Part shown: piece after piece, positions 1,186 to 54,816 of the stretch
Layout of the letters: every line of letters starts with the position of its first letter
Position numbering within the stretch: the stretch's first letter is position 1
NCBI GenBank assembly: GCA_963924565.1
Contig: OZ004608.1
Span: forward strand, 14,694,001-14,758,000
Direction of reading: 5' to 3'
From: Ascidiella aspersa
Lineage: Eukaryota
DNA: 64,000 nt
The notes under the pieces: model-generated
The model's input: only the letters and a program-made list of their open reading frames with translations
The model's database searches: none
Told to the model about the DNA's origin: nothing
Position numbers and translations under genes: made by a program

Positions 1186-4100
1186 TTGCTGAAGATTACT
1201 TTTACGTCTTTGAATTTGTCCTGCATTTCCAGTTATCTGCGGGTGTACGATGGCTACAGAATTGTAAGTAATGTATTTTACACCTTAAAAGGGTCTACAT
1301 ACCCAGCGGTATGTTGCTGTTCAAAATATTTATTGTACCCCTCGCTCTGGCCTTTCTATGAGAACAAAAATTGGAAAAACACGACACGTTGTTTCGGTAG
1401 GAATAGGCAGATCGCCTGATTTTAATGTCGGTTATTCGAAATAGGAATCTAACAACCCTTTAAAGACGCCAACCAATCCTATTCTTTATTAATTATTCAA
1501 CTCTTTAAAAGATTTAGGCCAATTGATAAAAATTCGCTTTGTTTTTGGTATACCTTTAAGATAACTATTATTTTAGTTTAAAAATATATTTCCGAGTAGC
1601 TGGACCAACAGCACTAGATTGTTATTAAAAATTCTAAAAAAGGTCTAAAAATGTGTGTTCTGAATTTTAAAGGACATTAAACAGTGAACCAATAAAATAG
1701 CATAATTTTTTATAATAAATTCTTTTAAATTACACGGCGAAGAAAAATTGTGAAGTTTTTGCTCGAAAACTGTTCGTACATGTGTTTTTACACTATGTTA
1801 ATATTAAAACATTATAAGTTCAAAAAAAAAAAAACAGTTTGTTTTGTAATAAATTCAGTTCGGGGACCGAAACTTCTGCGGAACTGAAAAACCAAGGGAA
1901 TTCGTTTCTTCAGGGGAACTGGTGCGAATCTACCTTTACCGCAACTATTATTACCAAAGTCATGTGCCGCTAGCGAGCTTTCAAATGTTCTGGAATGTGA
2001 CAGGTTTGTCGACAGAAACTTCGGGGAAAACACTAATGTGGGTAACAAGATTTTGGGTAAATTTCTATGTTGGGGTGATAATTGCACCAAGGTATTTTTT
2101 CTTTAATTCAACTTACCCACCATAACCCTATAAACAAATAAAAGCTCTGTATATGTTATTTGGCCCTTAAACACGAAACATAATTGTAATATCACTATAT
2201 GCTGGCAAAACGCGACGTCAGATAGCGTCAAGGGTAGACATTTGTGTAACATCGCCGAAGATTTTGTGCGATCCAAAAAAAATAAAAAAGAATTTGTGCG
2301 AAGCAACCATAAATAATCTGTTTATAATTCTATAATATAATAATATTTCTATTCGAAAGAAATGTTATAATGTAAAACTCTAAACAGGAATCCTAAAACT
2401 GACTTTGGCGTCAAGTAATAACCAAACCAAACTTTTATTCTTTGGTTTAGCAATATTTTTTGGTAAACCAAAGTCGTAACGTGCTTCGAAACCTATTATT
2501 TCTATCTGTTCTTATTCCTGTCCAATTATTACCTGTTCTTATTCATGGTGTTTTCCGTTACTGCTGGGTAATTCCGGTGGGTGTGTTACACTGACGTCAA
2601 TAGGGTAGTGGAATTTTTTTGGAAACGTCCTACGTAACCACAAAAAACAAGCGAAACAGATCCAGATCAGTGCTCTTCAGCCCTTTTCTCGTTGTATGTA
2701 GCCCACGTTTAACCGCCTAATAATGACTTTGTATAGCTCACAAACAGCAATCCGTAAAAAAGATGCGTTTGTTTGGACAAAATTAGCCACAACAAACAAA
2801 ACGGTTTTACACAGGATAGAAGGCCGTGCTTTCCCGAAATTGTTCGAAAAAATCCGATATTAATGAATAAGAAATCGTCTTACTGTCGTGATATGCAGTA
2901 ACTTGATTTATTGTATTTCTGCTTTAATACACGACCATGCAACTAACAAAATTTAATTGCGTTTAACAAATCGTGGTATAATACAGAATAAATCAAACTA
3001 AAATGCAAAAAAATGTAGTTTGTGCGCAATTGTAAGCTAATGTTTTAGGATTTAGAGTTTAGACCATTTACTTTATACACCAAATCTTTGTAAAGGTTGC
3101 TTAAGATTCGTACTCTACTAAAAATAGGCTGTAATTGATATTTGTTGCTTTCACGATGACAGTAGGTGTTCCAAGTTTGCCAAACATAATAGTTGGGTAT
3201 TCCTCGATTTTAGACGGGTGTCCGAACAACAATTTTCGCTGCTGGAATGGAATGTGCGTTCATCAAACCAAGCGATGCGATAAGATACGTGACTGTGAAG
3301 ACGACAGCGATGAAATGTCTTGTGGTGAGTTCATGCCAACTGCTAGTTTACTTTGATACTTTTTTTTGATTTTTTAAAAGATTTCAACCGAATCGTATGC
3401 CTAATTCATTTGCAAGTTAAGTGAACACCAAGTTGTTTAACCACTTAAAACATTAGTAAACCCATACTATAAATGACGTTAAATGCAATCCATAAAACAT
3501 TTGTTTTTTAAATTGTACAACTTAATTTAATCACACTCATACAATTGTTGAATAATAAAAACAAACAGGTCGTTCAAATTTTTTTAAAGATCTAATTTAT
3601 TTTCCGTATGTCTTAAAGCACAAAACTCGACATCGTTTGATCAATGTGGTAAAACCCCAGTTGCACCTGGTTTTACCTGGGTAAGCATCTCTATTTGAAC
3701 ATTTTGTTAACTCAATGTTTCGTTTTTTAATAAAGTTGGTTTGTGCAGTGTAGATCTTTACATACTATTTTTTAGGTTTCGTAAATATAATTATCTAGGG
3801 AAATCGGTCTCGTGGTATATAGCTGAATGTTATATAATAATGAACGGTTTTCGCAAATAGGCTACGTAAAAACGTTTTAAGAAACCTCACTTAATTTAGT
3901 TTTTGGTATTGGTAAATTTTGGGTTTTGTGAAGTAAATAGTAAAAAAGGGATTGTTTAAATATACCTTGCAACATTGTTTGGTGCAACAGACTCCAAAAA
4001 TTCTGGGCGGTGACGAGTCGACCTATGGGGCGTGGCCTTGGCAGGTACGAGTTCACCGGGATACGTCATACTACTCACGGCCGGCTTGCGGAGGAACTAT

Positions 4101-54816: not shown

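What the first reader, a model, noticed from the sequence alone, without database searches (positions are those of the whole stretch)
1186..54816. Six-protease, membrane-anchored polyprotein: a possible proteolytic cascade on a single chain
Seen: 76 phase-compatible exons give one ORF of about 2,850 aa, with six [CUB(1-2)-LDLa-propeptide-S1 protease] modules, a Ser/Thr stalk and a hydrophobic tail. Known: the characterised multi-protease chains I know (ovochymase, polyserase-1/TMPRSS9, polyserase-2) carry up to three S1 domains. CUB+LDLa stems normally serve a single protease, as in matriptase and enteropeptidase. Inference: six domains, each with its own CUB-LDLa stem and a C-terminal anchor, may be an undescribed architecture. 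It could act as a self-contained cell-surface protease array (egg coat, sperm, gut or immune). More modules may lie upstream.
Basis: partly seen in the sequence, partly recalled or inferred. Interest (0 to 1): 0.92.

Follow-up and report, generated by a model that had tools for sequence, protein, structure and literature searches.

The report
Six-module tunicate polyserase gene
This stretch of a sea-squirt genome most likely encodes one very long cell-surface protein carrying six trypsin-like protease units in a row (four apparently active, two dead), a larger version of a gene family already predicted, but never studied, in other animals.

Summary
On the + strand I rebuilt an open, all GT-AG model of 72 exons and 2,841 aa. 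Its order is signal peptide, six [CUB(1-2)-LDLa-propeptide-S1 protease] modules, a short Ser/Thr/Asn stalk, and a hydrophobic C-terminus that stops at 54816.

The gene starts 3.3 kb upstream of the window with a signal-peptide exon, so no further modules lie upstream.

One gene is the best reading, but it rests on structure only:
- All six protease domains end in a phase-1 donor at the same aligned position.
- Every CUB opens with a phase-1 acceptor, and the module gaps are 77-1,384 nt.
- No gap holds a signal-peptide-like or tail-like exon. The same scans found both at gene borders in a sister array 2 Mb away.

No RNA data could be obtained.

Modules 1 and 5 lack catalytic residues. Modules 3 and 6 are trypsin-like (Asp189), and modules 2 and 4 have Ser/Gly189.

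The genome is a tunicate's. Styela clava RefSeq proteins have the same module chain three times, with the same kind of stalk and tail. Predicted six-S1 proteins also exist in Antedon and Owenia.

I read it as an enlarged variant of the polyserase/ovochymase kind. A "cascade" is not specifically supported. The scan had also noted the sister array (s1-790922).

The parts
1186..8252 (+). Module 1 (in-window part): CUB exons b and c, LDLa, propeptide, and a catalytically dead S1 domain. Exons 1186-1263, 1859-2003, 3214-3324, 3619-3680, 3991-4154, 4547-4633, 4749-4909, 7169-7362, 8108-8252. Its signal-peptide exon (L003:6694-6799) and first CUB exon (L003:7320-7465) lie upstream of the window.
   Evidence: Pfam Trypsin at 4000-4146 and Ldl_recept_a at 3135-3353. 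His57 is Gly, Asp102 is Asn and Ser195 is Trp. Splice sites. Upstream exons.
8253..8329 (+). 77-nt intron joining protease 1 to the CUB of module 2 (phase 1, GTGAGT...TTAG).
   Evidence: Sequence read directly. It is the only compatible donor/acceptor pair. It leaves no room for a promoter or a signal-peptide exon.
8330..21583 (+). Module 2: CUB, LDLa, propeptide and an S1 domain with a full triad and Ser189. Exons 8330-8463, 8704-8805, 18636-18768, 18890-19000, 19080-19141, 19582-19745, 19962-20066, 20600-20757, 20996-21162, 21439-21583.
   Evidence: Pfam CUB at 8314-8583 and Trypsin at 19591-19743 and 21430-21576. Triad read. The acceptor at 20996 is weak.
8806..18635 (+). 9.8-kb intron inside the CUB of module 2, filled with transposon remains (reverse transcriptase and integrase ORFs, 382-bp repeats).
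22956..28925 (+). Module 3: two CUBs, LDLa, propeptide and an S1 domain with a full triad and Asp189 (trypsin-like). Exons 22956-23080, 23152-23241, 23755-23896, 24135-24256, 24365-24454, 24749-24896, 25967-26077, 26298-26359, 26507-26655, 26815-26907, 27120-27265, 27905-28059, 28778-28925.
   Evidence: Pfam CUB and LDLa and Trypsin. Residues read.
29504..36381 (+). Module 4: two CUBs, LDLa, propeptide and an S1 domain with a full triad and Gly189. The P1 and P2 exons are fused. Exons 29504-29625, 29887-29973, 30093-30219, 30455-30576, 31135-31227, 31526-31667, 32033-32143, 32442-32503, 33905-34164, 34402-34553, 35720-35874, 36231-36381.
   Evidence: Pfam Trypsin at 33914-34165, E 2.7e-15, and CUB at 31463-31741. 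Residues read. The donor at 36381 is weak.
36679..40518 (+). Module 5: CUB, LDLa, propeptide and a dead S1 domain. His57 is Ser, Ser195 is Glu, and the Cys191-Cys220 pair is lost. Exons 36679-36797, 37083-37172, 37525-37654, 37824-37934, 38012-38070, 38200-38345, 38625-38705, 39443-39588, 39870-40021, 40374-40518.
   Evidence: Pfam Trypsin at 38209-38343 and LDLa at 37724-37969. Residues read.
41903..49524 (+). Module 6: CUB, LDLa, propeptide and an S1 domain with a full triad and Asp189. Exons 41903-42015, 42167-42256, 44965-45097, 46439-46549, 46713-46774, 47580-47734, 48080-48178, 48271-48425, 48871-49034, 49377-49524.
   Evidence: Pfam Trypsin at 47589-47732 and 49371-49517 and LDLa at 46153-46560. 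Residues read. The donor at 48425 is weak.
49773..54135 (+). Predicted Ser/Thr/Asn/Pro-rich stalk made of phase 1-1 mini-exons: 49773-49808, 51062-51106, 51965-51991, 53205-53249, 54109-54135.
   Evidence: Acceptor scores 4.4-7.2 and donor scores 4.9-5.0, all in phase 1. Not verified by RNA.
50250..54533 (.). Two 100%-identical tandem copies of a 2,141-bp unit. Each copy carries two stalk mini-exons and two dispersed repeat elements.
   Evidence: The mini-exons lie outside the dispersed elements (unit positions 813-857 and 1716-1742, against 1-285 and 934-1321).
54725..54816 (+). Predicted terminal exon: a short basic stretch, then an 18-residue hydrophobic C-terminus with one residue after it, then the stop. 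It resembles a GPI-attachment signal.
   Evidence: Acceptor score 6.1 and translation. The same kind of terminal exon follows the last protease of sister-array genes and ends Styela clava P0254.
57495..58563 (+). Start of the next gene: a signal-peptide-like exon (ATG at 57495) and a first CUB exon (58267-58563). This bounds the 3' end of the polyserase gene.

Best explanation
One tunicate gene runs from about 3.3 kb upstream of the window to window 54816. It encodes a polyserase of about 2,840 residues, in this order:
- a cleavable signal peptide;
- six tandem zymogen modules, each [CUB x1-2, LDLa, Cys-bearing propeptide, R/K|I(V/I/L)GG, S1 protease];
- a short glycosylatable stalk;
- a C-terminal hydrophobic signal that probably leads to a GPI anchor.

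The module is a phase 1-1 exon set that was duplicated in tandem inside the gene, with modules 3 and 4 the most recent pair.

Proposed working (inferred):
- The chain is displayed on the cell surface.
- Cleavage after Arg/Lys at each activation site is done by the two Asp189 domains (modules 3 and 6) or by an outside trypsin-like enzyme.
- This switches on four catalytic domains of differing S1 pockets (Asp, Asp, Ser, Gly at position 189).
- Each cleaved domain stays tied to its own stem through the propeptide Cys to Cys122 disulfide, and to the next module through the peptide chain. The product is therefore a tethered array of proteases.
- The two dead domains (modules 1 and 5) would act as binding or regulatory units, as proposed for dead domains of other polyserases.

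Shown: domains, phases, open frame and residue states. Inferred: single transcript, anchor type, activation order, and biological role.
For: The open GT-AG model of 72 exons and 2,841 aa comes.

Evidence for one gene:
- All six last protease exons have a phase-1 donor in the same alignment column (8252, 21583, 28925, 36381, 40518, 49524).
- All CUB first exons have phase-1 acceptors.
- The direct gaps are 77, 1372, 578, 297 and 1384 nt.
- In the scanned stretch (10 kb upstream plus the window), the only strong signal-peptide exon followed by a phase-1 donor is at window -3306 (donor score 7.8). A weaker one sits at 57495, the next gene. None lies in a module gap, even under loose criteria.
- The same scan found signal-peptide exons before each of 7 multi-module genes of the sister array.
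- The tail scan found S/T plus hydrophobic terminal exons after at least four of those genes and none in the window's gaps.

The dead modules 1 and 5 keep ten open exons each, with intact splice sites and cysteines, despite long branches of 1.8 and 2.05.

Relatives: Styela clava P0041 is [CUB-LDLa-S1]x3. P0254 is CUB-CUB-[CUB-LDLa-S1]x3 with a signal peptide, an S/T stalk and a hydrophobic end. The window's six protease domains group with the third domain of both Styela proteins (94/97).
Against: There is no transcript evidence.

Some splice sites score poorly on my crude matrix: donor 36381 at -0.6, donor 48425 at -6.0, acceptor 20996 at -3.2, and donor 36797 at -3.1.

In the sister array a gene border fits into a 1.25-kb gap. 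The two 1.4-kb gaps here could therefore hide a border that my scans miss.

The terminal exon lies 5.2 kb past the last protease, beyond a 100%-identical duplication that could be an assembly artefact. No AATAAA occurs within 600 nt of the stop. The hydrophobic stretch is less hydrophobic than in the paralogues (1.89 against 2.5-2.65).
Confidence: 0.6

Rival explanations
1. The locus is a tight tandem array of two or three separate genes (for instance modules 1-2, 3-5 and 6), split at the two 1.4-kb gaps. Each would have its own promoter and leader, which my scans did not recognise.
For: The sister array on the same chromosome consists of genes of 1-4 modules, never six, and one of its gene borders fits in 1.25 kb. 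The known Styela relatives have three modules. No RNA evidence ties the modules together.
Against: Neither 1.4-kb gap holds an ATG exon with a hydrophobic core and a phase-1 donor, nor a hydrophobic terminal exon. The same scans found both at the sister array's borders. The phase-1 donors after proteases 2 and 5 are good (scores 4.0 and 6.3). Modules 3 and 6 would lack a signal peptide although they are made of disulfide-rich extracellular domains.
Confidence: 0.2
2. It is one six-module gene with a different 3' end. Either it stops 18 codons after the last protease exon by read-through (stop at 49578-49580), giving a secreted protein, or it skips the predicted tail and splices on to the CUB-rich exons at 58-70 kb. 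In both cases it is not membrane-anchored.
For: The tail exons are small, unverified and partly inside a perfect duplication. No AATAAA follows the stop at 54816. A phase-1 CUB first exon lies at 58267-58563 and more CUB exons follow on the + strand. Ovochymases contain several CUB domains and are secreted (PMC9265791).
Against: The terminal exon has a strong acceptor (6.1) and matches the family's S/T plus hydrophobic ending. All candidate stalk exons with good sites on both sides are in phase 1-1. A signal-peptide-like ATG exon at 57495 precedes the downstream CUB exon. That CUB exon also resembles the first CUB after this gene's own signal peptide, as expected of a separate gene's start.
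Confidence: 0.15
3. The locus, or parts of it such as modules 1 and 5, is a decaying relic that is not expressed as protein.
For: Two modules have lost catalytic residues. A 9.8-kb transposon-filled intron and SINE-like insertions lie inside the locus.
Against: The 8.5 kb of coding sequence in 72 exons has no stop or frameshift, and every splice site is GT-AG. The dead domains keep cysteines and activation motifs at high divergence. Dead domains are usual in working polyserases (PMC11172050, PMC9265791).
Confidence: 0.05

Closest known systems
Styela clava predicted proteins 'transmembrane protease serine 9-like isoform X1' (P0254, 1,633 aa) and LOC120348165 (P0041, 1,392 aa)
   Same: They are tunicate proteins with the same repeated unit CUB-LDLa-propeptide-S1 in the same order. 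P0254 has an N-terminal signal peptide, a Ser/Thr stalk and a short hydrophobic C-terminus. The window's six protease domains group with their third domain.
   Different: They have three modules, not six. Identity is only about 40-56% in the conserved exons. They are not one-to-one orthologues, since the window's modules all derive from the 'third-domain' type. They are themselves uncharacterised predictions.
Ovochymase / HrOvochymase (ascidian and vertebrate egg-associated polyproteases)
   Same: A signal peptide, several S1 domains interspersed with CUB domains on one chain, and a last domain without a catalytic triad in Halocynthia (PMC9265791).
   Different: Three protease domains, and no LDLa or anchor in the description I read. 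The domain order is protease then CUBs, rather than a CUB-LDLa stem before each protease.
Human polyserase-1 (TMPRSS9), polyserase-2 and polyserase-3
   Same: Several S1 domains translated as one chain, each with its own activation site. Inactive domains occur. Polyserase-1 is membrane-bound and has an LDLa (abstract of PMC1435904; the LDLa is from my own knowledge).
   Different: Two or three domains. Polyserase-1 is a type II protein with an N-terminal anchor, whereas this one has an N-terminal signal peptide and a C-terminal anchor signal. There are no CUB stems.
Matriptase / enteropeptidase (CUB-LDLa stem type II serine proteases)
   Same: A CUB plus LDLa stem immediately before a disulfide-tethered S1 domain that is activated at R/K|IVGG.
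   Different: They have a single protease domain, an N-terminal signal anchor and a SEA domain.
Predicted six-S1 proteins: Antedon mediterranea P0237 (3,860 aa) and Owenia fusiformis P0003 (2,729 aa)
   Same: Six Trypsin domains on one predicted chain, with 7 CUB and 8 LDLa (Antedon) or 8 CUB (Owenia). Antedon has a hydrophobic segment near its C-terminus.
   Different: The domain order is irregular, and Owenia has no LDLa. Their protease domains form separate, lineage-specific clades, so the multiplication was independent. Both are unverified gene models.

Membership tests
Polyserase / polyprotease (several S1 domains in one polypeptide) | Two or more chymotrypsin-fold S1 domains | tested here: met
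   Six sets of Pfam Trypsin exon matches on one strand. Aligned domains.
Polyserase / polyprotease (several S1 domains in one polypeptide) | The domains are translated from a single ORF or transcript | tested here: inconclusive
   There is a continuous frame through phase-1 junctions and no leader or tail exons in the gaps. No RNA evidence was available.
Polyserase / polyprotease (several S1 domains in one polypeptide) | Each domain is preceded by its own zymogen activation site | tested here: met
   K|ILGG, R|IIGG, R|IVGG, R|IIGG, K|IVGG and R|IVGG.
Ovochymase | Secreted chain of S1 domains with CUB domains between them | tested here: met
   Signal-peptide-like exon. Nine CUB domains alternate with the proteases.
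Ovochymase | Orthology to vertebrate or ascidian ovochymase; architecture without LDLa or anchor | tested here: not met
   An LDLa precedes every protease and a hydrophobic C-terminal exon is predicted. Ovochymase-1 proteins appeared only as distant hits of the Owenia query. No ovochymase sequence was placed in the tree.
Type II transmembrane serine proteases (TMPRSS9, matriptase) | N-terminal signal anchor with a cytoplasmic tail | tested here: not met
   The N-terminus is a short signal-peptide-like sequence ending in AAA, followed by N/T/S-rich residues. The hydrophobic segment is at the C-terminus.
Type II transmembrane serine proteases (TMPRSS9, matriptase) | Stem of CUB/LDLa modules, with a propeptide Cys tethering the S1 domain | tested here: met
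   a CGK...Cys in each pro exon and Cys122 (P(I/V/A)C) in each P3 exon.
Tunicate [CUB-LDLa-S1]n family (Styela clava P0254 / P0041) | Repeated CUB-LDLa-propeptide-S1 unit in that order | tested here: met
   Domain strings from the same local profiles. These profiles were built from the window's own exons, so the window's row is circular; the Styela rows are not.
Tunicate [CUB-LDLa-S1]n family (Styela clava P0254 / P0041) | Protease domains cluster with the family's domains | tested here: met
   The six window domains plus the two Styela third domains form one group with 94/97 support, which is below the tool's star threshold.
Tunicate [CUB-LDLa-S1]n family (Styela clava P0254 / P0041) | Ser/Thr stalk and short hydrophobic C-terminus | tested here: inconclusive
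   Predicted exons fit this pattern, as do P0254 and the sister-array genes. The exons are not verified by RNA.
GPI-anchored proteins | Omega site plus spacer plus C-terminal hydrophobic signal, and release by PI-PLC | not testable with these tools
   Only the sequence pattern was seen. No GPI predictor or experiment was available.

The most novel reading that the evidence does not exclude
A GPI-anchored chain of six protease modules works as a self-contained surface device. Two trypsin-like modules (3 and 6) fire the others in cis or between neighbouring chains, and two pseudoprotease modules act as substrate-docking or brake elements. The gene belongs to a fast-multiplying tunicate family with at least 26 modules on one chromosome. 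Its copy-number and module-number turnover would reflect an arms race, for example in gamete recognition, allorecognition or immunity.
Probability: 0.2. Interest if true: 0.65.

Novelty: new variant of a known kind. Interest (0 to 1): 0.42.

Why it matters
Every characterised polyserase described in the papers I read has two or three protease domains, and what the extra domains do is still unclear. If this gene is confirmed as one transcript, it would give a natural six-module chain to study. The chain has four differently pocketed active domains and two dead ones, and sister genes of one to four modules sit in the same genome.

That makes a ready comparative series for asking three questions: how tethered protease arrays are activated, what pseudoprotease modules contribute, and how phase 1-1 module duplication builds giant extracellular proteins.

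The interest is tempered because similar multi-S1 proteins are already predicted in public proteomes, though unstudied.

Tried and rejected
- **The look-up of encoding contigs:** it was closed, so the Styela gene structure could not be compared.
- **Same-species proteins or transcript fragments:** an exon search found no candidate, and the representative search gave no hit near 100% identity.
- **One-to-one module orthology:** it was tested against Owenia, Antedon, Styela and others and rejected. Best hits are not collinear, and the tree shows lineage-specific clades.
- **More modules upstream:** rejected.
- **Ser/Thr stalk as an artefact of dispersed repeats:** considered after and rejected for the mini-exons, which lie in the unique parts of the duplicated unit.
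- **Paralogue of the tail at DNA level:** none was found.
- I replaced it with coordinate-based and alignment-based methods.
- **Joined model:** the joined protein was built only in the sandbox, for length, alignment, local profiles and a tree. No structure or complex prediction was made for the same reason.
- **Literature:** searches found no description of this tunicate family.
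Full report
**What is there**

The window is G000:C2:14,694,001-14,758,000 of a 308-Mb genome. Pfam Trypsin matches, exon by exon on the + strand, define six S1 protease domains. Their first exons start near 3991, 19582, 26507, 33905, 38200 and 47580, and their last exons end at 8252, 21583, 28925, 36381, 40518 and 49524. Before each protease lie an LDLa exon and one or two three-exon CUB domains. 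LDLa exons scored 31-38 bits against a cut-off of 24.1. CUB first exons scored 25-29 bits against a cut-off of 21.4. Between the LDLa and the protease sits a short exon with a conserved Cys-Gly-Lys...Val-Ala-Pro...Trp motif, the propeptide.

**Gene model**

I aligned the stop-free stretches of each exon class across modules and mapped every GT and AG onto the alignment. In every module the acceptor and donor of each class fall in the same column and phase:

| Exon class | Phases (acceptor-donor) |
|---|---|
| CUBa | 1-0 |
| CUBb | 0-0 |
| CUBc | 0-1 |
| LDLa | 1-1 |
| pro | 1-0 |
| P1 | 0-2 |
| P2 | 2-2 |
| P3 | 2-1 |
| P4 | 1-0 |
| P5 | 0-1 |

The whole module is therefore a phase 1-1 unit. 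Module 4 has P1 and P2 fused. Joined in the sandbox only, 72 exons give 8,526 nt and 2,841 aa with no internal stop, and all introns are GT-AG. All database work was done exon by exon by reference. The difference is a few optional phase 1-1 mini-exons in the module gaps, which cannot be judged without RNA, and two exons upstream of the window.

**The 5' end**

Module 1 begins in the window with the second CUB exon (1186). In the 40 kb upstream there is no further protease, LDLa or propeptide exon. At window -2680..-2535 (L003:7320-7465) there is a divergent first CUB exon with the right phases. Its local-profile E-value is 0.022, and Pfam does not detect it. At -3306..-3201 (L003:6694-6799) there is an ATG exon reading as a classical signal peptide, followed by an Asn/Thr/Ser-rich stretch and a strong phase-1 donor with score 7.8.

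**The 3' end**

After protease 6 the conserved phase-1 donor (49524) is followed by mini-exons at 49773-49808, 51062-51106 and 51965-51991. The last two are repeated at 53205-53249 and 54109-54135. All have good sites on both sides, all are phase 1-1, and all are rich in Ser/Thr/Asn/Pro. A terminal exon at 54725-54816 has acceptor score 6.1. It ends in an 18-residue hydrophobic stretch, one more residue and a stop.

Region 50250-54533 is a perfect two-copy tandem duplication of 2,141 bp that also carries two dispersed repeat families. The mini-exons lie in its unique parts. A next gene starts at about 57495 with a signal-peptide-like exon and then several CUB domains out to about 70 kb.

**One gene or several**

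The case is therefore structural.

1. All six proteases end with a GT in phase 1, two to four residues after the Trp-Ile motif, in the same alignment column. Five of the six score 2.8-7.8. Nothing would preserve such a site at the end of a terminal exon.
2. Every CUB first exon has a phase-1 acceptor. The direct gaps are 77, 1,372, 578, 297 and 1,384 nt.
3. A scan for ATG exons with a hydrophobic core and a phase-1 donor finds none in any gap, even under loose criteria. A scan for hydrophobic terminal exons also finds none there.
4. Both scans have a positive control. A sister locus at C2:12.57-12.75 Mb holds 19 modules of the same kind. There the first scan picks out seven signal-peptide exons, each 0.2-1.9 kb before a CUB exon. 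The second finds Ser/Thr plus hydrophobic terminal exons 0.2-0.6 kb after the last protease of at least four genes. That locus therefore resolves into genes of one to four modules.
5. A caution follows from the same control. One of its gene borders fits in 1.25 kb, so the two 1.4-kb gaps here are the places where my inference is weakest.
6. The dead modules 1 and 5 have the longest branches in the tree (1.8 and 2.05) yet keep ten open exons each, with splice sites, cysteines and activation motifs intact. This argues that they are translated.

**Catalytic anatomy**

| Module | Activation site | Catalytic residues and residue 189 |
|---|---|---|
| 2 | R\|IIGG | Full triad, Ser189 |
| 3 | R\|IVGG | Full triad, Asp189 |
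| 4 | R\|IIGG | Full triad, Gly189 |
| 5 | K\|IVGG | His57 to Ser, Ser195 to Glu, Cys191-Cys220 pair lost |
| 6 | R\|IVGG | Full triad, Asp189 |

All modules keep the propeptide Cys and Cys122. A cleaved domain can therefore remain disulfide-bound to its stem. This follows from the general chemistry of chymotrypsin-fold zymogens and is an inference for this protein.

**Whose genome, and relatives**

Cellulose_synt and Glyco_hydro_6 matches lie 2.7 kb apart on one strand. Among animals this is the signature of the tunicate cellulose synthase (my own knowledge), so the genome is a tunicate's.

The exhaustive protein search with one protease exon ranked multi-S1 proteins first. They include a gar protein with 14 Trypsin domains, Owenia fusiformis with 6 Trypsin and 8 CUB, and others. 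Further searches found Antedon mediterranea with 6 Trypsin, 8 LDLa and 7 CUB, and two Styela clava RefSeq proteins.

With local profiles, the Styela proteins read [CUB-LDLa-S1]x3 and CUB-CUB-[CUB-LDLa-S1]x3. The longer one has a signal peptide, a Ser/Thr stalk and a hydrophobic C-terminus. In a tree of protease domains the six window domains group with the third domain of both Styela proteins (94/97), and modules 3 and 4 are sisters (96/94). Owenia, crinoid and holothurian domains form their own clades. The multiplication to six happened within the tunicate lineage and independently of the other phyla.

**Known versus new**

The polyproteases described in the papers I read have two or three S1 domains. 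These are the human polyserases (PMC1435904 abstract), insect polypeptidases (PMC11172050) and HrOvochymase, which has three domains, the last without a triad (PMC9265791). A six-module chain with a CUB-LDLa stem per protease and a C-terminal anchor signal is not among them. The same module chain is, however, already predicted in Styela, and six-S1 chains are predicted elsewhere. I therefore class it as a new variant of a known kind.

**Mechanism**

The best reading is a surface-tethered array. All six activation sites need Arg/Lys specificity, and only modules 3 and 6 have it. An ordered cascade along the chain is therefore not indicated. Two internal activators, or an external one, are more likely to switch on domains of different specificity, with two pseudoprotease modules as non-catalytic partners. 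The tissue and substrate are unknown. Egg-coat or sperm roles are suggested only by analogy with ascidian ovochymase.

**Limits**

My splice scoring matrix is generic, and several accepted sites score poorly on it. The first CUB exon, the stalk, the terminal exon and the anchor type are predictions.

Noticed in passing
G000:C2:12,570,001-12,750,000 (loci L005-L022): A sister array of 19 [CUB-LDLa-propeptide-S1] modules lies on the + strand. Signal-peptide exons and Ser/Thr plus hydrophobic terminal exons divide it into about seven genes of one to four modules. These include near-identical three-module repeats, some of whose last modules lack the LDLa.
   Followed up: partly
G000:C5:19,610,700-19,614,090: Cellulose_synt and Glyco_hydro_6 matches lie 2.7 kb apart on the same strand. 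This is the tunicate cellulose-synthase signature, so the genome is a tunicate's.
   Followed up: partly
window 57495-64000 and L023 (to about window 70,000), + strand: The next gene has a signal-peptide-like exon at 57495. It is followed by at least five CUB domains with no protease exon. Its first CUB exon (58267-58563) resembles the first CUB exon of the polyserase gene.
   Followed up: partly
L024, about window 77,800-82,600, - strand: A convergent single-module gene of the same family: CUB, LDLa, propeptide and S1 exons, all on the minus strand.
   Followed up: no
window 50250-54533: A perfect (100%) two-copy tandem duplication of 2,141 bp. It holds a 285-bp element with thousands of genomic copies and a second element of about 380 bp. 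It could be very recent or an assembly artefact.
   Followed up: partly
window 59000-59800 and 60900-61900: Another pair of similar stretches about 1.9 kb apart, downstream of the finding, seen in the self-comparison.
   Followed up: no
window 29177-29401, + strand: In the gap between modules 3 and 4 there is an open stretch that faintly resembles the propeptide exon (Cys ... Glu-Phe-Glu-Trp-Val), with local profile E 2.2. It may be a remnant of a lost unit, or chance.
   Followed up: no
window 10700-18000: The 9.8-kb intron inside the CUB of module 2 holds degraded retrotransposon ORFs (reverse transcriptase, integrase, gag-like) and tandem 382-bp units, as the earlier notes describe.
   Followed up: no
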